DNA of 32,000 nt, from NCBI RefSeq assembly GCF_000400465.1, contig NW_008806274.1, positions 57,319 through 89,318 on the forward strand. The letters run 5' to 3'. The position numbers were made by a program, and so were the translations under genes. A model generated the notes under the pieces. The model had not been told where the DNA came from and did not search any database. It saw only the letters and a list, made by a program, of their open reading frames with translations. Below are positions 24,227-32,000 of the stretch, in pieces (within the stretch, counting starts at the first letter, position 1; every line of letters begins with the position of its first letter). Source of the DNA: Wallemia ichthyophaga EXF-994. Taxonomy: Eukaryota; Fungi; Basidiomycota.

Positions 24227-25344
24227 ATGCTCGTTAATTCATTTAAATTGCCAAACCACGCACAGCAACTACCACCAATCCAAGTATCCTACCCAACTCA
24301 ACTCACAACCTTCTCAATCAACAAAGATAGATATATTTTGTATAATAATTCTCAATTATCTTATTATAATGATGCTAGATTGAGTATTGGCAGTGACTTG
24401 AATTTTGGCGTTGAAGGGATGGTTTTCAATGAAAATATTGAACACCTAGACAACCTATTACTGGCAATTGATCATTATAAATTAGATTGGTGGTCTTATA
24501 ACGTTATCACCTTCAGAGGCATCCTCACTAAGCTAACAACGGCTTTGTACAACTACGATGACAACTGGTGTCTCAATTGTATGCTCATCCACAATTCCAT
24601 ATTTATCAGCGACAATTCACCACCAGCTAAACCATCCTCAGAATGGCACAAAAGGGCCATGTACAATGGCTACGCCTTCGAAGGTCTAGCCACTGGTGCA
24701 CCTCACACTCCGACAAACAATTCGGCTCAATGGGCAACTATCAATAAACTACGCTTTGGTAAACACAAGATTCTAACTGCAGGGGAAGTTGATTGTGCGT
24801 CTACCGATCAATTCCATCAACAACACCTCTACACTCCCCATCAAGATGACTACATTGAACTTAAGACATCCATTCAAATCCAATCCCCCGCCCAACAAGA
24901 CCGATTCGATCAGAAGCTGCTCAAGTTTTACTTTCAGAGTTATCTATTAGGTGTCCCAGTTAGTTTGAGTAAGGGTGAAAATATTCACTAACAACCACTT
25001 AGAAAATAGTTGTCGGATTCAAAAACAAAAGCGGTATTCTAGTCGATGTGAAGGAGTACGATACGCTATCACTCCCTAATCTCGTTCGCGGGAGTAACTA
25101 CGCATGGAACCACAAAACCTGCACTAGTCTTGCCGAAATGCTGATTGAGTTTGTGCGCGAGACCATCACGTCTATTGGGGATGAAAGCAAGATGTACAAA
25201 GTGTTTTACAGCGCAGCTGATCGCACAATCTCAATCCAAGTCACTCATCTCGATGACATCTCTTACCCCACTCCCGACCCTTTCCCGCGGTATGGCTTCA
25301 TGCCTGCTCATTTGCATGCACGTATGCGCGAATGTGTGCGCTAG
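24227..25344 (+). CDS. RAI1: Rai1/DXO decapping exonuclease family
   Basis: VITFRGILTKL, YNGYAFEGLAT, GEVDC, YIELKTS, KLLKFYFQSYLLGVP/KIVVGF. Intron 24959-25002. Confidence 0.88.
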
Positions 25345-25443: not shown

Positions 25444-26385
25444 TCATTGACCTTGCACCTCTTTCACCCCCCACTCCCCATCAAATGACTTGATATCCCA
25501 CTCAGACACGCCAATACCACCGCCAAGCTCAATCCACTTATCCGACATCTTCTTTTTACGCTCATCGACGAAATCCATAAGCTGTGACCAGTATTTATCG
25601 TGATCGTAGACACTCAAATCGACATTCCCGCCAAAACTGTCCTCTAGCTGAGATTTATCTACCACATGCGAGACGTCATTCGAGAAGGACAGTTTCTCTC
25701 TGGTAACGGGGTCGAGGAGGGGCGAGATAATTTTAAACATCCACGTGACGACGGCTGGAAGGTTAATAACGAAAGCAGTTCCCAGTGTTTCTGGGTAATG
25801 ATCGGCTAGGGCATAAAGTACGCCTTTTGACGTGGCGAGCGACGGACCCTTAGCCTTCTTAGCGTAATTGATAAGCAGACTGACGGTTTCCACGCCTCTC
25901 GGAGCGCATATTTTAGCCAATTCGAGCATAAAGAAAGCATGATCAGTTTGCCGGGTGCTCTCCTCTGTGTTCTGTCTATCCGGCTTCATGTACCAGAGGG
26001 GGCGGGCCAAGTTATCGAATCCGCACAGGAGCTGCTTGCCCGTGAGCTGCTCGGGTGCTATATAGTCGCCGCTCATCAATTTGCCTCCCTCGTTGAGTCC
26101 TATAGTGCGACGCCAGATTAGGGTCTTTTGTAATCGCTCGATCGTCGTCACAGTGTTCCATCTCGTCGCTCGCAGATAGCGCAACATGCATTCTCTAGTT
26201 AAGAATCGCTCTTCTACCCCGCTTATTCCCGCAGGAGTATTATCATTCTCGCTCATAGGGAGAGTGTTGAGTTGGCGCATCGCTGTTAGCACCAAATCAT
26301 ACTTTTCCTCTTGCTCACCCGTCAGCGCTGCTGGCTTTTGCGGCGGTTTTGCGCTGCTTGGTGGGTGTATTGGAAGATCGATCAT
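25444..26385 (-). CDS. PDR16: CRAL-TRIO/Sec14-like lipid transfer protein, Pdr16/Pdr17 (Sfh3/4) type
   Basis: LTRECMLRYLRATRW, TGKQLLCGFD..RPLWYMKPDRQNT, HYPETLG, ISPLLDPVTREKL. Intronless. Confidence 0.88.
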   Translation of the reverse strand: MIDLPIHPPSSAKPPQKPAALTGEQEEKYDLVLTAMRQLNTLPMSENDNTPAGISGVEERFLTRECMLRYLRATRWNTVTTIERLQKTLIWRRTIGLNEGGKLMSGDYIAPEQLTGKQLLCGFDNLARPLWYMKPDRQNTEESTRQTDHAFFMLELAKICAPRGVETVSLLINYAKKAKGPSLATSKGVLYALADHYPETLGTAFVINLPAVVTWMFKIISPLLDPVTREKLSFSNDVSHVVDKSQLEDSFGGNVDLSVYDHDKYWSQLMDFVDERKKKMSDKWIELGGGIGVSEWDIKSFDGEWGVKEVQGQ

Positions 26386-26479
26386 GGCAGACGCGGTGAG
26401 AGGTGCGTGTACATATATATAAACATAAATATCATTACAATGCCATCAAATTGAAAAAAAATCAAGCAAATCAAATGAC

Positions 26480-28154
26480 TCACGCTTTCCCGGAATATTC
26501 CCCAGAAGCGTAATTATCATTAGACATTCCCCCGATGCTCCTCTTCCTGGCCTCGATAATCTCCCTATACACTCCATCATGCCCATGGGCGTCTTTCGAG
26601 TCATGTGAATGCTTGATGCGTTTCAACTCGCTAACGAAGCTCGTTCCCCAGAAGGAGCTAGTATATTTACTAACGTATTTGAAAAGTTTAGCGTGCTTCT
26701 CAGCGCGTTCCTCCGCCGACATGGTGACAGCTTCATGGATGGCGGTAGCCATTTCAGCGATATTCCAAGGATTGACGATACGTGCGCCATGGAAAGACTG
26801 TGCAGCGCCTGCGAATTCGCTAAGTATCATAACTCCATGATTAGCGCATTGCGTGGAAATATACTCATAGCTGACCAGATTCATCCCGTCGCGCGTGCTG
26901 CTCACGAGACATGCATCGCTAATCGCGTACAGCGCGCAAAGTTCATCGAAAGTGAGTGACTTGTGCATAAAGTGAATGGGCATGAACTCGACTGTACCGA
27001 ACCGACCGTTTATACGACCTACTAACTCGTTCACACGCGCACGAAGCGTCTGATACTCCTCAACTCCTCCCCGTGAAGGAATCGCGAGTTGCACTAGCAC
27101 TACCTTGCCAATCCACTCGGGGTGCTGCTGGAGGAATACTTCCAAGGCGTGCAGCTTCTGTGGTACACCTTTTATATAGTCGAGTCGATCTACCCCGCAA
27201 ATTATCTTCACACCCTCGAATCGCTTCCGAAGTGCTTCGATACGTCGCACCACCCCAGGCGTCTCAAGCATCTCGATAAACTGACTGGGCTCTATGCCAA
27301 TAGGGAAAGTGCCACAGTGGACGAAACGAGCACCGAATTGAACACCGTTGGGTAGGGCACTAAGACCGAGGATGCGGGTGCATGAGCTGAGAAAGTGCCT
27401 TGCATAGTCATATGTATGGAAACCGACGAGATCGCAGTGAAGAATACCAAGGAGAATTTCCCTTCTGACAGGTAGAATTCTGTAGATTTCCGAGCTGGGA
27501 AAGGGAGTGTGGAGGAACCAGCCAATTTTGACACCGTGTTTCGGGTGAACGTTGTCTACAACGACGCCATCAATACCTCTATGCAAACGATCGAGTTCTT
27601 TATGCGTTTCATGACCAACGTTGTTCTTCTCGATCAAACCACGAAGCATCATAGGCAGGAGCATAAGGTGGTAGTCCTGGACCCAGACAAGGTCACCGGA
27701 GCGGACCTGGCTAGTGACGACCTGAGCAAACATGGCATTGGCTGCGCGATAAGCAAACCAGTTGGTCTCGTCAAAGTTCATTTCACCTGGGTGGTAGTGG
27801 AAGAGTGGCCAAATCATTTCATTAGCGAATCCATTGTAGTACTTGTCAGCGATGTTGTCTGGGAGGAAGACAGGCTGGCACGAGTATTCATCGCGCAGTC
27901 GCTGTGTAACGTGGTCGTGGTCAGCTTCGGGGATTTCGATGCCCAGCCAGCCAATCCAGGTGAAATCCATCTGCTTCTTGCAGCCACTCAATGCGGAAAC
28001 CAAGCCACCGCTGGATAACTTGAATTCATCTGAGTTGTCGTGTGAGCGTGTGTGTGCTACACGTGGTTCACTCACACTCCCCGTCAAATCTACGAGATAC
28101 AGTCACAGGGAGCCTGTTGGAAACAACGATAAGCCTATTGGTAGACGTGGACAT
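26480..28154 (-). CDS. TPS1: Trehalose-6-phosphate synthase catalytic subunit (GT20)
   Basis: RLIVVSNRLPVT, SSGGLVSAL, WVQDYHLMLLP, GWFLHTPFPSSE, GVDRLDYIKGVP, RDGMNLVSYEY, LSEFAGAA. Exons 28154-28076 and 28029-26480. Confidence 0.97.
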
Positions 28155-29498: not shown

Positions 29499-32000
29499 AT
29501 GACTGCAGAGGACACAGTCTACGTGAACTCTGAGCAGCAGCCGCTGCTCCATGAACATAGCAGCACCAGCACCTCTATCCGACGCAGCAAGAAATGCTAC
29601 TGTAGCGTCTTGGGTGTGGTAGTTGCCGCATGTCTTTGGATCTGGCTACTCTTCTGGTTCCTGTCCGGCAATGCTCCACCCACTGGCATTCAACTTGGCC
29701 ACATCAAGCCAAATGCCACTTACTACGACGAGAAGGGTGGCCGCACTATTCTCGTCGGTGATATCCACGGAATGCTTACTCCATTTGAGTGAGTTGGCGT
29801 GTTTCTATTGGTTTTACCTTTTTTTTAACTTTTTTTTTTTTAGGAACCTCCTCTACGAATTAGACTACGATCAGGACAAAGACACGCTTATTGCGCTCGG
29901 TGATGTGATCGCCAAAGGTTCAAATTCCCAAGGAGTTTTAAACAAATTAGTTGAATTAGATGCACTCGCCGTGCGCGGCAATCACGACCAATTAGTCGTA
30001 GAATGGCGCGCTTTCCTCGACCAAGTGGAGAGTGTTAAAGGTGGTGAAGAATGGATCGCGATGGGATGCCCTAAGCGTCTCCGCCCAACTGGCGCGATGA
30101 AGCTTCCTAAGCACATGAAGACAAACACCCCTCACTTCCACATCGCACGTAACCTCACCCCGCACACCAAGGAGTTCCTCTACAACACCCCGCTCTACAT
30201 CCACTTGCCTGACTACGACATGTACGCGGTGCACGCGGGTATGTTATCGGAGGACCCTACAAAGCCTCTCTCAACGTCCAACCCACCTTTCTTAAAGACA
30301 GGTCGCGGCGAGATTGACGTCTTCTCCATTCCCCAAAACAACCCAAAGAGTCTCGTTGAAATGCGCAGTATCGACTTGCACGGTAATCCTACACCAGACG
30401 ACGATGCCGGGCCTGCATGGTACAACTACTGGAACTTCGACATGAGCGGTTGTCGCGAAGAGGACGGATGCACTCCTCAACGTGTTTCGTACGGTCACGC
30501 TGCCGGACGCGGGCTCGACCTGAATGCATACACTTTCGGACTCGACACAAGATGCTATGGCGCGGGCAGACTCTCCGCACTCGTTCTCACTGCTGACAGA
30601 AAGGCGCAGACAGACTGTCACCGCAACCCACACCAATGCCACGGTGCATATGAAGACTACCAGGATGGTTATGAGGATGTGGACGTCTGTGGCGACTGCG
30701 AAGATTGCGATGAATACAGCTACAGCGGCGACTGCGACGATTGTGACGATTCGCTTGACTGCGACGACGACTACAACTACGACGACGACGATAACCTCGT
30801 AGCTAGCCGCCGCTGCTGCCACCACTGCTGCTGCTGCCACCACCGCCACTCGCACGGCCACTACAAGCACGGCAAACACGGAAAGAGTGGTAAGAAGGGC
30901 AAGAAGGGCAAGAAAGGCAAGCACGGTAAACACGGCAAGTCTGGCAAACACGGTAAACACGCTGACGATGGTGACGATGGTGACGATGGCCAAGATGGCG
31001 ATGACGGTCAAGACGGCGACGATGGCCACCATGGCTTCCCAGGTCATCCAGGTCGTCCGGGACACGGCGGTCACAGTCACGACGGTTATCCAGGCTACCC
31101 AGGTCGTCCAGGCCACGGTGGTAACGGTGGTCACGGTGGACATGGCCACGATGGTGAAGATGGCGACGATGGCCGTGATGGCTACCCAGGTCGCCCAGGT
31201 CGTCCAGGCCACGGTGGTAACGGTGGTCACGGTGGACATGGCCACGATGGTGAAGATGGCGACGATGGCCGTGATGGCTACCCAGGTCGCCCAGGTCGTC
31301 CAGGCCACGGTGGTAACGGTGGTCACGGTGGACATGGCCACGATGGTGAAGATGGCGACGATGGCCGTGATGGCTACCCAGGTCGCCCAGGTCGTCCAGG
31401 CCACGGTGGTAACGGTGGTCACGGTGGACATGGCCACGATGGTGAAGATGGCGACGATGGCCGTGATGGCTACCCAGGTCGCCCAGGTCGTCCAGGCCAC
31501 GGTGGTAACGGTGGTCACGGTGGACATGGCCACGATGGTGAAGATGGCGACGATGGCCGTGATGGCTACCCAGGTCGCCCAGGTCGTCCAGGCCACGGTG
31601 GTAACGGTGGTCACGGTGGACATGGCCACGATGGTGAAGATGGCGACGATGGCCGTGATGGCTACCCAGGTCGCCCAGGTCGTCCAGGCCACGGTGGTAA
31701 CGGTGGTCACGGTGGACATGGCCACGATGGTGAAGATGGCGACGATGGCCGTGATGGCTACCCAGGTCGCCCAGGTCGTCCAGGCCACGGTGGTAACGGT
31801 GGTCACGGTGGACATGGCCACGATGGTGAAGATGGCGACGATGGCCGTGATGGCTACCCAGGTCGCCCAGGTCGTCCAGGCCACGGTGGTAACGGTGGTC
31901 ACGGTGGACATGGCCACGATGGTGAAGATGGCGACGATGGCCGCGATGGCTACCCAGGCTACCCAGGTTACCCAGGTCGTCCAGGCCACGGTGGCAAGGG
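29499..32000 (+). CDS. PPN2: Type II membrane ApaH/Ppn2-like metallophosphoesterase (putative vacuolar endopolyphosphatase) with long Cys/His- and Gly-X-Y-rich extension; 3' end beyond the window
   Basis: PPP-type motifs GDIHG, GDVIAKG, RGNHD, VHAG, YGHAAGRGL and GLDTRC, preceded by an EQQPLL dileucine motif and one TM helix. Intron 29789-29843; exon 2 has no stop from 29844 to 32000 (at least 815 aa in total). Confidence 0.85.
30871..32000 (+). repeat. Collagen-like Gly-X-Y region (about 117 triplets, periodic 2-residue interruptions)
   Basis: Hand translation: GKH GKS GKK GKK GKK GKH GKH GKS GKH GKH ADD GDD GDD GQD GDD GQD GDD GHH GFP GHP GRP GHG GHS HD GYP GYP GRP, then the 32-aa repeat. 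Confidence 0.9.
31108..31980 (+). repeat. 96-bp coding minisatellite: 8 apparently identical units (31108-31875) plus one 105-bp variant unit
   Basis: Unit starts at 31108, 31204, 31300, 31396, 31492, 31588, 31684, 31780 and 31876. Each encodes PGHGGNGGHGGHGHDGEDGDDGRDGYPGRPGR. Confidence 0.97.

What the first reader, a model, noticed from the sequence alone, without database searches (positions are those of the whole stretch)
29499..32000. Ppn2/ApaH-like polyphosphatase fused to a Cys/His cluster and a long collagen-like His-Gly-Asp repeat
Seen: after splicing intron 29789-29843 one frame runs stop-free to the window end. It comprises a cytosolic EQQPLL motif ([DE]xxxLL), a TM helix (about 29595-29663) and an intact metallophosphoesterase (to about 30600, roughly 350 aa). 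It then adds at least 466 aa: an Asp/Cys segment, CCHHCCCCHHRHSHGH and about 117 Gly-X-Y triplets. The ORF track misses this and shows only the antisense shadow. Established: yeast Ppn2 is a roughly 330-aa Zn-dependent vacuolar endopolyphosphatase with no such tail; vacuoles co-store polyP and Zn; polyP binds His-repeat and Lys-rich tracts. Inference: a lumenal or surface polyP/metal-handling module in which the tail captures polyP and Zn/Cu, oligomerises or scaffolds the enzyme. The tail may be an insertion before the enzyme's final beta-strand. I know of no description of this architecture.
Basis: partly seen in the sequence, partly recalled or inferred. Interest (0 to 1): 0.9.

Follow-up and report, generated by a model that had tools for sequence, protein, structure and literature searches.

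The report
Polyphosphatase-family gene with giant His/Gly/Asp insert
The halophilic fungus Wallemia ichthyophaga has an unannotated gene for a membrane-anchored ApaH-like (yeast Ppn2-type) phosphatase. A surface loop of this enzyme has grown into a roughly 700-residue, strain-variable, histidine/glycine/aspartate-rich repeat tract that is clearly translated, but its function is unproven.

Summary
The window is W. ichthyophaga EXF-994 scaffold KE007224.1. From ATG 29499, with intron 29789-29843 removed, one frame stays open for 815 aa to the window end. That end abuts a 925-N assembly gap.

A gap-free contig of another strain gives a complete 1051-aa protein.

The catalytic part is an ApaH-like phosphatase (ALPH), the family whose only S. 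cerevisiae member is Ppn2. No assembly examined annotates the gene.

Strain SNPs in the unique part of the insert are all synonymous. Indels are multiples of 9 nt, and repeat units give pN/pS of 0.15. The insert is therefore translated and constrained.

A collagen triple helix is unlikely. The Gly-X-Y register slips once per unit, imino content is 10%, both ends are anchored on one domain, and AF2 predicts disorder.

The same loop carries 150-340-aa low-complexity inserts in other basidiomycete yeasts, so the site is permissive.

PolyP or metal binding is plausible (blocky charges that flip sign with His protonation) but untested. This is a new variant of a known kind, of moderate interest.

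The parts
29499..29788 (+). Exon 1 (96 codons + 2 nt): cytosolic N-terminus, TM anchor, start of the catalytic domain including motif 1 GDIHG
   Evidence: Identical in 9 assemblies apart from 4 synonymous SNPs.
29532..29549 (+). EQQPLL, an acidic dileucine-type motif ([DE]xxxLL) in the 32-aa cytosolic N-terminus
   Evidence: The W. mellicola ortholog has ESSSLL in the equivalent N-terminal segment. Among 38 family members only one other has anything similar (EKLSLV in P0011). A sorting role is inferred only.
29595..29669 (+). Predicted TM helix (aa 33-57), preceded by RRSKK, which fits N-in, type II topology
   Evidence: The equivalent helix (aa 10-40) appears in the AF2 model of the W. mellicola ortholog.
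29789..29843 (+). 55-nt intron, GTGAGT...poly-T...AG
   Evidence: In-frame TGA at 29790-29792. Among strains the only indels are of 1-3 nt, and the acceptor is TAG or CAG. The position is not shared with the W. mellicola intron.
29844..32000 (+). Exon 2, open to the window end; it continues beyond a 925-N gap in the scaffold
29739..30576 (+). ALPH catalytic domain (aa 81-341, spanning the intron). Motifs: GDIHG 87, GDVIAKG 116, GNHD 142, HAG 227, VSYGH 311, LDTR 330. Sequons: NAT 72, NLT 200.
30613..30804 (+). Acidic Cys/Asp block (aa 354-417): 25 D+E, 8 Cys, net charge about -24
   Evidence: Four synonymous and no non-synonymous strain SNPs lie here.
30814..30861 (+). CCHHCCCCHHRHSHGH cluster (6 Cys, 7 His)
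   Evidence: Invariant in 9 assemblies.
30862..30960 (+). Basic Lys/His/Gly block, YKHGKHGKSGKKGKKGKKGKHGKHGKSGKHGKH (14 K, 6 H). It is the counterpart of the KKGGKGKGKKGDKKHKG stretch in W. mellicola.
30961..31026 (+). Acidic (D/Q)DG block; the copy number of the 9-nt GACGATGGT unit varies among strains (2-4)
31087..32000 (+). Repeat array of His/Gly/Pro/Asp units (32 aa = 96 bp in this assembly, GYPGRPGRPGHGGNGGHGGHGHDGEDGDDGRD). It is truncated by the assembly gap.
   Evidence: Other strains have heterogeneous 38-44-aa units that differ by multiples of 9 nt.
30292..31989 (-). Antisense 565-aa ORF: a compositional shadow of the repeat, not a gene
   Evidence: The strain SNPs fall on third codon positions of the + frame.

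Best explanation
This is the W. ichthyophaga ortholog of the fungal ApaH-like phosphatase (ALPH), the family whose only S. cerevisiae member is Ppn2, the vacuolar Zn2+-dependent endopolyphosphatase. It is a type II membrane protein: a short cytosolic N-terminus carrying an ExxxLL motif, one TM helix, and a lumenal catalytic domain.

Shown:
- The loop between the last core strand (RLSALVL) and the terminal beta-hairpin (LILEKEV...GQIFSIRC) has expanded from about 55 aa in W. mellicola to about 680 aa.
- The insert consists of alternating charge blocks (acidic Cys/Asp, CCHH cluster, basic Lys/His/Gly, acidic DDG) followed by a minisatellite of 11 or more units of 32-44 aa.
- It is translated, kept in frame, under purifying selection at the amino-acid level, and hypervariable in unit number and length between strains.

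Inferred:
- The insert is an intrinsically disordered, multivalent polyampholyte rather than a collagen rod.
- Its basic halves (Arg/Lys plus protonated His at vacuolar pH) bind the polyP substrate, and its acidic and His/Cys parts bind divalent cations such as Zn2+. This would hold the enzyme on polyP-metal deposits and near its cofactor.
- The array's net charge flips from about -26 to +11 as His protonates, which would make any such binding pH-dependent.
For: Identity of the source and synteny.

Complete gene in another strain: in the gap-free strain contig L007 the frame is open from ATG to stop (1051 aa) and ends in the conserved terminal strand. The same strand follows the gap in the reference.

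ALPH membership:
- Motifs and spacings.
- PDB 2qjc at E = 5e-19, and 2e-45 with the family profile.
- Foldseek TMt of 0.78 for the ortholog model.
- Family members P0034 and P0023 are listed as the single ALPH of their species in the same table as yeast P40152/Ppn2.

Insert position: in the AF2 model of the W. mellicola ortholog, the insert (aa 337-389) is low-confidence (pLDDT below 50 over 353-380) and the two terminal strands have pLDDT of about 90.

Coding constraint:
- 13 synonymous against 1 non-synonymous SNP across 9 assemblies; 5 synonymous and 0 non-synonymous in the insert.
- Exon indels occur only in multiples of 9 nt, while intron indels are 1-3 nt.
- Repeat-unit pN/pS is 0.15, with differences by codon position of 67/33/310.

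Disorder and charge: AF2 mean pLDDT of 36 for the insert; block charges.

Ancestral composition: W. mellicola has HHHHH followed by a K/G/D-rich stretch at the same site.

Literature: polyP binds His tracts non-covalently, and an interrupted His-rich protein (HRG) is suggested as a further case. Ppn2 is Zn2+-dependent and lumenal.
Against: - No expression, localisation, enzymatic or binding data exist for this protein.
- Yeast Ppn2 itself was never aligned here. No Saccharomyces hit appeared in the profile search.
- Motif 5 deviates at one position (VSYGH).
- The frame must be preserved anyway, to keep the terminal hairpin of the enzyme, so in-frame indels alone do not prove that the insert has a function.
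- The same loop carries unrelated Ser/Ala-rich inserts of 150-340 aa in other basidiomycetes, so it may simply tolerate junk.
- Demonstrated His-polyP binding used 5 or more consecutive His; here the longest run is 2.
- Repeat copy number and order come from short-read assemblies.
Confidence: 0.45

Rival explanations
1. Tolerated runaway expansion. The loop before the terminal hairpin is structurally permissive. A coding minisatellite has grown there by replication slippage and unequal exchange, and selection keeps only the reading frame and solubility. The insert has no specific ligand-binding role.
For: - The site carries variable inserts across the family: median C-terminus 47 aa, Microbotryum 151, Sporidiobolales-type 270-340 aa of unrelated Ser/Ala-rich sequence.
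- The array differs in unit length and number between strains of one species.
- The tail has no homologs elsewhere.
- It is predicted to be disordered.
Against: - pN/pS of 0.15 among units and 5 synonymous against 0 non-synonymous SNPs in the unique part of the insert point to amino-acid-level constraint beyond frame keeping.
- The His/Lys/Gly/Asp composition is shared with W. mellicola despite only 50% identity in the enzyme.
- The Cys/His cluster is invariant in 9 assemblies, although these strains are very close.
Confidence: 0.35
2. True collagen-like triple helix. The Gly-X-Y tract trimerises the enzyme and forms a rigid stalk or scaffold in the lumen or at the cell surface.
For: - The Pfam Collagen model is exceeded (73 bits on the whole protein; 34 and 29 bits on sub-segments).
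- Pro sits in the Y position of GYP/GRP triplets, and charged triplets resemble those of bacterial collagens (sequence).
- Collagen domains, and in most such species putative prolyl 4-hydroxylases, are reported in fungi.
Against: - The unit length is 2 mod 3, so the Gly register slips once per unit. The longest uninterrupted run is 14 triplets here and 20 in L007.
- About 4 of 11 triplets per unit have Gly in the Y position, and imino content is 10%.
- Both ends of the insert attach to the same beta-sheet of one domain. A long parallel homotrimeric rod is hard to reconcile with that topology.
- The AF2 monomer shows no structure, which is a weak test.
Confidence: 0.08
3. The insert is absent from the mature enzyme. 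Either it is removed by unannotated splicing, or vacuolar proteases excise it and leave the terminal hairpin non-covalently bound. In that case it would act, at most, as a propeptide or spacer.
For: - No transcript or peptide evidence was available.
- From general knowledge, not tested here: vacuolar hydrolases are often proteolytically matured, and disordered loops are protease-sensitive.
Against: - Synonymous-only SNPs and triplet-preserving indels show that the region is translated.
- Wallemia introns seen here are 43-55 nt, far smaller than the roughly 2-kb insert.
- No data bear on proteolysis.
Confidence: 0.1
4. Assembly artefact. The tail is a misjoin or a collapsed or invented repeat.
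For: - The reference was assembled from short reads with K = 21, and the array of nine identical 96-bp units runs straight into a 925-N gap.
- Six strain contigs and one Logan contig break inside or at the start of the array.
Against: - Nine independent assemblies agree base for base up to the first repeat unit.
- One strain contig spans the whole gene in frame.
- The sequence after the gap encodes the homologous terminal strand.
- Gene order matches W. mellicola.
- Only the copy number and the uniformity of the units in the reference are doubtful.
Confidence: 0.02

Closest known systems
S. cerevisiae Ppn2 (YNL217W, P40152), vacuolar Zn2+-dependent endopolyphosphatase
   Same: - ALPH-type PPP metallophosphatase and the single fungal ALPH per genome.
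- Non-cytoplasmic with a membrane anchor; the catalytic domain is lumenal.
   Different: - Ppn2 is 326 aa with a short C-terminus. Here about 680 aa are inserted before the terminal hairpin.
- Activity, metal dependence and localisation of the Wallemia protein are untested.
- The two sequences were not aligned here.
W. mellicola 'Metallo-dependent phosphatase' (P0001, 411 aa)
   Same: - Syntenic ortholog with 50% identity.
- Same TM anchor and ExxxLL motif.
- A His/Lys/Gly/Asp-rich insert at the same loop, and the terminal GQIFSVGC strand.
   Different: - Its insert is only about 55 aa.
- It has HHHHH but no Cys cluster and no Pro-containing Gly-X-Y repeat array.
- Its intron is at a different position.
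Trypanosoma brucei ApaH-like phosphatase (PDB 2qjc) and bacterial ApaH
   Same: Best solved-structure relatives by sequence and fold.
   Different: They are soluble and about 260-290 aa, with no insert. Their substrates are Ap4A and mRNA caps.
Sporidiobolales-type and Microbotryum ALPHs (P0303, P0309, P0297, P0323, P0324, P0047)
   Same: Long low-complexity insert at the same site, followed by the terminal xVVSVxC strand.
   Different: Their inserts are Ser/Ala/Thr/acidic-rich, 150-340 aa and not tandemly repeated. They have no His/Cys/Lys blocks and no Gly-X-Y periodicity.
Collagen triple-helix repeat proteins (Pfam PF01391; fungal examples cited in bioRxiv 10.1101/2021.10.08.463732)
   Same: Gly at every third residue over runs of 10-20 triplets, with Pro in the Y position of some triplets; passes the Pfam threshold.
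   Different: A register slip in every unit, Gly-rich X/Y positions, low imino content, location inside an enzyme loop, and predicted disorder.
Histidine-tract polyP binding (iH-PPn; bioRxiv 10.1101/2023.04.10.536149). From memory only: His/Gly-rich metal-binding proteins such as the SlyD tail, Hpn, the Nereis jaw protein and mussel preCol flanks.
   Same: High His content next to Lys-rich and acidic stretches; plausible polyP and/or Zn, Ni or Cu binding.
   Different: Demonstrated polyP binding used 5-13 consecutive His, whereas here His is interspersed (HGGHGGHGH). No homology to any of these proteins was found.

Membership tests
ApaH-like phosphatases (ALPH, PPP superfamily; criteria of PMC8220851) | Motifs 1-4: GDxHG; GDxx(neutral)xKG with Arg replaced by Lys; GNH[ED]; H[AG]G | tested here: met
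   GDIHG at 87, GDVIAKG at 116, GNHD at 142, HAG at 227 (matrices quoted).
ApaH-like phosphatases (ALPH, PPP superfamily; criteria of PMC8220851) | Conserved spacings: motif 1 to 2 about 29, motif 2 to 3 about 26, motif 5 to 6 = 19 | tested here: met
   29, 26 and 19, counted start to start. The 5-to-6 spacing is 19 in all 37 scorable relatives.
ApaH-like phosphatases (ALPH, PPP superfamily; criteria of PMC8220851) | C-terminal motifs 5 ([AVILCMT][IVYFLAMT][FY]GH) and 6 ([LVIMT][DE][LATGSV][LMGRASNE]) | tested here: inconclusive
   Motif 6, LDTR at 330, is met. Motif 5 is VSYGH: the YGH core is present, but Ser at position 2 lies outside the published matrix. The W. mellicola ortholog has IIYGH.
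ApaH-like phosphatases (ALPH, PPP superfamily; criteria of PMC8220851) | Closest solved structures are ApaH or ALPH; same family as curated ALPH entries | tested here: met
   2qjc is the best hit by sequence, profile and fold. Relatives P0034 and P0023 are in the paper's ALPH table.
Ppn2-type vacuolar endopolyphosphatase | Orthology to S. cerevisiae YNL217W | not tested
Orthology is inferred from one ALPH per fungal proteome.
Ppn2-type vacuolar endopolyphosphatase | Non-cytoplasmic, membrane-anchored, catalytic domain in the lumen | tested here: met
   Prediction only. A hydrophobic 25-mer at aa 33-57 follows RRSKK, with two N-glycosylation sequons downstream. The ortholog model has the equivalent helix.
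Ppn2-type vacuolar endopolyphosphatase | Zn2+-dependent endopolyphosphatase activity; delivery to the vacuole | not testable with these tools
   Needs enzyme assays and microscopy.
Collagen triple helix (PF01391) | Pfam gathering threshold | tested here: met
   73.3 bits against 27.2; 34.4 and 29.2 bits on sub-segments. Composition bias contributes.
Collagen triple helix (PF01391) | Long uninterrupted (Gly-X-Y)n with high imino-acid content | tested here: not met
   Runs of at most 14 triplets (window) or 20 (L007), with a one-residue slip per unit. Pro is 10%. Many Y positions are Gly.
Collagen triple helix (PF01391) | Trimeric triple-helical fold | not testable with these tools
   The AF2 monomer gives pLDDT 36, which does not test trimers. 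The loop topology argues against a trimeric rod.
Histidine-repeat polyP-binding proteins (iH-PPn) | Tract of 5 or more consecutive His | tested here: not met
   The longest His run is 2 in W. ichthyophaga. W. mellicola has HHHHH.

The most novel reading that the evidence does not exclude
The insert is a functional, pH- and metal-switchable polyampholyte. It tethers a Ppn2-type polyphosphatase to polyP-cation deposits, or buffers Zn/Cu, in the vacuole of the most halophilic fungus known. This would be a natural fusion of an enzyme with a disordered substrate- or cofactor-capturing domain, whose multivalency was amplified by a rapidly evolving coding minisatellite.
Probability: 0.2. Interest if true: 0.7.

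Novelty: new variant of a known kind. Interest (0 to 1): 0.45.

Why it matters
If the insert binds polyP or metals, it would be a natural example of a disordered domain that recruits a polyphosphatase to its polymeric substrate. It would also give an easy handle, full-length against loop-deleted protein, for studying how vacuolar polyP-metal stores are accessed.

It also offers interspersed His/Gly and Lys/Gly motifs for polyP-protein interaction studies, which so far centre on consecutive His or Lys tracts.

There is a practical lesson as well. The only ALPH gene found at this locus is missing from the annotation of the reference and of the seven other annotated strain loci examined, because the repeat breaks short-read assemblies and gene callers. 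Proteome-based surveys would therefore score this species as lacking the enzyme.

If the insert is only tolerated junk, the finding is still a clear case of a hypervariable coding minisatellite inside an enzyme loop.

Tried and rejected
1. Finding yeast Ppn2 among homologs. Neither the single-sequence search nor the profile search listed a Saccharomyces protein. The J Cell Sci 2017 paper is not held. Family assignment therefore rests on the ALPH survey.

2. Looking up the spliced PDI-like neighbour to reach other strains. The single-exon TPS ORF and a cluster member were used instead.

3. Using conservation of intron position to support the splice model. It failed, because the W. mellicola intron lies 23 nt further downstream in CDS coordinates and in a different phase. 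The splice is supported instead by the in-frame stop, the restored motif spacing and the indel pattern.

4. Searching for the tail elsewhere. Only three weak metagenomic collagen-like hits were found.

5. AF2 on the tail alone. There was no confident structure. This is uninformative about trimers.

6. 'Wallemia' does not occur in the stored supplements of the ALPH survey, one of which (file 3) was cut on storage. Whether that survey scored W. ichthyophaga as ALPH-negative is therefore unknown.

7. A tRNA scan of the window found none.

8. Treating the open frame as evidence of coding. Rejected, because other frames of the repeat are nearly stop-free too.
Full report
**Source and observation.** Three exact ORF products of the window are in the protein collection, and clusters 1 and 2 are otherwise made of Wallemia ichthyophaga proteins. 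The window maps to scaffold KE007224.1 of the EXF-994 reference, GCA_000400465.1.

- ATG at 29499.
- A 55-nt GTGAGT...AG intron at 29789-29843.
- 815 stop-free codons to the last base of the window.

The ORF list shows only exon 1 (97 aa, stopped by a TGA inside the intron) and a 565-aa antisense ORF over the repeat. The 96-bp unit occurs 9.0 times at 99% identity at 31098-31958.

The window ends exactly where the scaffold has a run of 925 N. After the gap the sequence reads ...RHGGKGSKGGHGGYGGLILEKEVPINKYSIGQIFSIRCSDWS*.

The reference and the seven other annotated strain loci examined carry no gene model between the PDI/ERp29-like gene and the next downstream gene.

**The complete gene.** A 300-kb contig of another strain (L007, GCA_004918895.1) crosses the locus without N. 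There the same ATG, the same intron and a single open frame give 1051 aa ending in GQIFSIRCSDWS*.

The syntenic W. mellicola ortholog (P0001, 411 aa, 50% identity) has the same neighbours. At the equivalent place it has a short insert, AAHHHHHKKGGKGKGKKGDKKHKGDGNKGGDDDKKHKGDGNDEGNDKDGGKKK, followed by ...GQIFSVGCI.

An AlphaFold2 model of that ortholog (mean pLDDT 82) shows:
- the TM helix;
- the phosphatase core ending in strand 318-324;
- a low-confidence loop, with pLDDT below 50 over residues 353-380;
- two terminal strands, 390-396 and 402-409, at pLDDT of about 90.

So the "tail" is an insertion in the loop before the terminal beta-hairpin.

**Is the insert coding?** An open frame is not enough here, because two other frames of 30600-32000 have at most one stop. 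The comparative evidence is strong.

- Across nine independent assemblies (gene positions 1-1612), the exon differences are 13 synonymous third-position SNPs and one K109R change. Five of the synonymous SNPs, and no non-synonymous one, lie in the insert.
- The only exon indels are 9-nt GACGATGGT units, whereas intron indels are 1-3 nt.
- Further into the array, strains differ by insertions and deletions that are always multiples of 9 nt.
- Among the 11 full units of L007 (38-44 aa), pooled pN/pS is 0.15. Differences by codon position are 67, 33 and 310.

Caveat on copy number. The reference was assembled from Illumina reads with SOAPdenovo at K = 21 (PMC3849046). The other strains come from PE150 reads (PMC6738226). 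Six strain contigs and one Logan contig end in or at the array. Copy numbers, unit order and the striking uniformity of the nine reference units are therefore unverified.

**Catalytic domain.** Pfam Metallophos passes on aa 1-352. On the full sequence it was masked by the repeat.

The best solved relatives are the T. brucei ApaH-like phosphatase 2qjc and bacterial ApaH, by sequence, by profile and by fold.

I applied the motif matrices of the ALPH survey (PMC8220851):
- Motifs 1-4 and 6 are present, with spacings of 29, 26 and 19.
- Motif 5 is VSYGH, one residue outside the published matrix.

Two of the relatives found here, from Amanita muscaria (M378DRAFT_177334) and Hypholoma sublateritium (HYPSUDRAFT_40402), are listed in that survey as the single ALPH of their species. 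The same table lists yeast P40152/YNL217W = Ppn2, 326 aa.

That paper reports that fungal ALPHs have short C-termini (median 26 aa), that 95% have no extra domain, and that 78% have a predicted TM helix or signal peptide. Ppn2 is a lumenal, Zn2+-dependent endopolyphosphatase of the vacuole.

Membership in ALPH is therefore well supported. One-to-one orthology with Ppn2 is inferred and was not aligned, because no Saccharomyces hit appeared.

The predicted topology is N-in: RRSKK lies before the 25-residue hydrophobic segment, and two N-glycosylation sequons lie after it. ExxxLL occurs in both Wallemia orthologs; among the other 37 family members scanned only one has a similar motif, EKLSLV in P0011.

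**Anatomy of the insert**.
- A 64-aa acidic block with 8 Cys (net charge about -24).
- CCHHCCCCHHRHSHGH.
- A 33-aa Lys/His/Gly block (+14, or +20 with His protonated).
- A 22-aa DDG block (-12).
- Then the repeat units, each with a basic half (GYPGRPGRPGHGG(K)GGNGGHGGHG) and an acidic half (HDGEDGDDGRD).

Overall composition is Gly 34-40%, Asp 14-17%, His 12% and Pro 7-8%. The array's net charge is about -26 with neutral His and +11 with protonated His.

**Collagen?** Pfam Collagen is exceeded, and there are about 123 triplet equivalents in the window and about 193 in L007. Several points argue against a triple helix:
- Every unit length is 2 mod 3, so the Gly register slips once per unit. The longest uninterrupted run is 14 triplets in the window and 20 in L007.
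- Many Y positions are Gly, and imino content is 10%.
- Both ends of the insert are anchored on one domain.
- The AF2 monomer is unstructured, with pLDDT 36. This is a weak test.

I rate a true triple-helical stalk as unlikely.

**How unusual is it?** The tail has no relatives among 5.8 billion proteins beyond three weak collagen-like hits. None of the 159 profile hits carries a Collagen domain.

In 37 scorable relatives the C-terminus after the catalytic domain has a median of 47 aa and a maximum of 151 aa. Here it is 710 aa.

However, an exhaustive search of 1.84 billion representatives found ALPHs of 1040-1150 aa. One relative of that size, found earlier, is named Rhodosporidiobolus ruineniae. 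These proteins carry 270-340 aa of Ser/Ala/acidic low-complexity sequence at exactly this site, before the terminal WVVSVDC.

The loop is therefore a permissive hot spot. What is new is the size, the tandem minisatellite nature and the His/Cys/Lys/Gly-X-Y composition of the insert.

**Mechanism.**

Shown: a real, translated, constrained and strain-variable insertion in a Ppn2-family enzyme.

Inferred: a disordered, multivalent polyampholyte that binds polyP through Lys, Arg and protonated His, and binds divalent metals through Asp, His and Cys, in a pH-dependent way.

The literature supports non-covalent polyP binding to tracts of 5 or more consecutive His and suggests it for interrupted His-rich proteins. 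This protein has no run longer than 2, whereas W. mellicola has five.

The main rival is a tolerated expansion with no specific role.

**Verdict.** The functional interpretation is plausible but untested. This is a new variant of a known kind, with interest of 0.45.

Noticed in passing
window 32000 / L002 3461-4385: The window's last base is immediately followed by a 925-N scaffold gap in KE007224.1. The gene is split by the gap, which probably explains why it was never annotated.
   Followed up: yes
window 25444-27970 (- strand): The reference annotates a trehalose-phosphate-synthase-like gene (496 aa) and a CRAL-TRIO gene (313 aa) separately. At least ten other strain assemblies annotate a single fused 844-aa product. 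One of the two sets of gene models is probably wrong.
   Followed up: no
window 24227-25344 (+ strand): The RAI1-domain gene is modelled as 340 aa in the reference, but as 413 aa with an added Zn_ribbon_RPAB4 domain in other strains and as 417 aa in W. mellicola. The reference model is likely truncated or mis-spliced.
   Followed up: no
window 29789-29843 vs L001 6314-6365: The single intron of the ALPH gene sits after CDS nt 290 in W. ichthyophaga but after nt 313 in W. mellicola (different phase and position). This implies intron sliding or independent loss and gain. The acceptor is TAG in EXF-994 and CAG in the eight other assemblies.
   Followed up: partly
P0303, P0309, P0297, P0323, P0324: ALPH homologs of 1040-1150 aa, probably Sporidiobolales, have long Ser/Ala-rich inserts both inside the catalytic domain and before the terminal strand. 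They also share a conserved KPWWRPW...APPQGRPGVAPW element within the C-terminal insert.
   Followed up: no
window 30292-31989 (-) and L004 1-816: The antisense frame of the repeat is open for 565 aa, and a prokaryote-style gene caller called it as a 271-aa product on a Logan contig. This is an example of a shadow ORF entering protein databases.
   Followed up: partly
P0084 (889 aa, Psilocybe cf. subviscida): This was the top profile hit, with twice the usual score, which suggests a tandem duplication of the ALPH domain in one protein. It is similar to the double-ALPH protein noted for Rhizopogon in PMC8220851.
   Followed up: no
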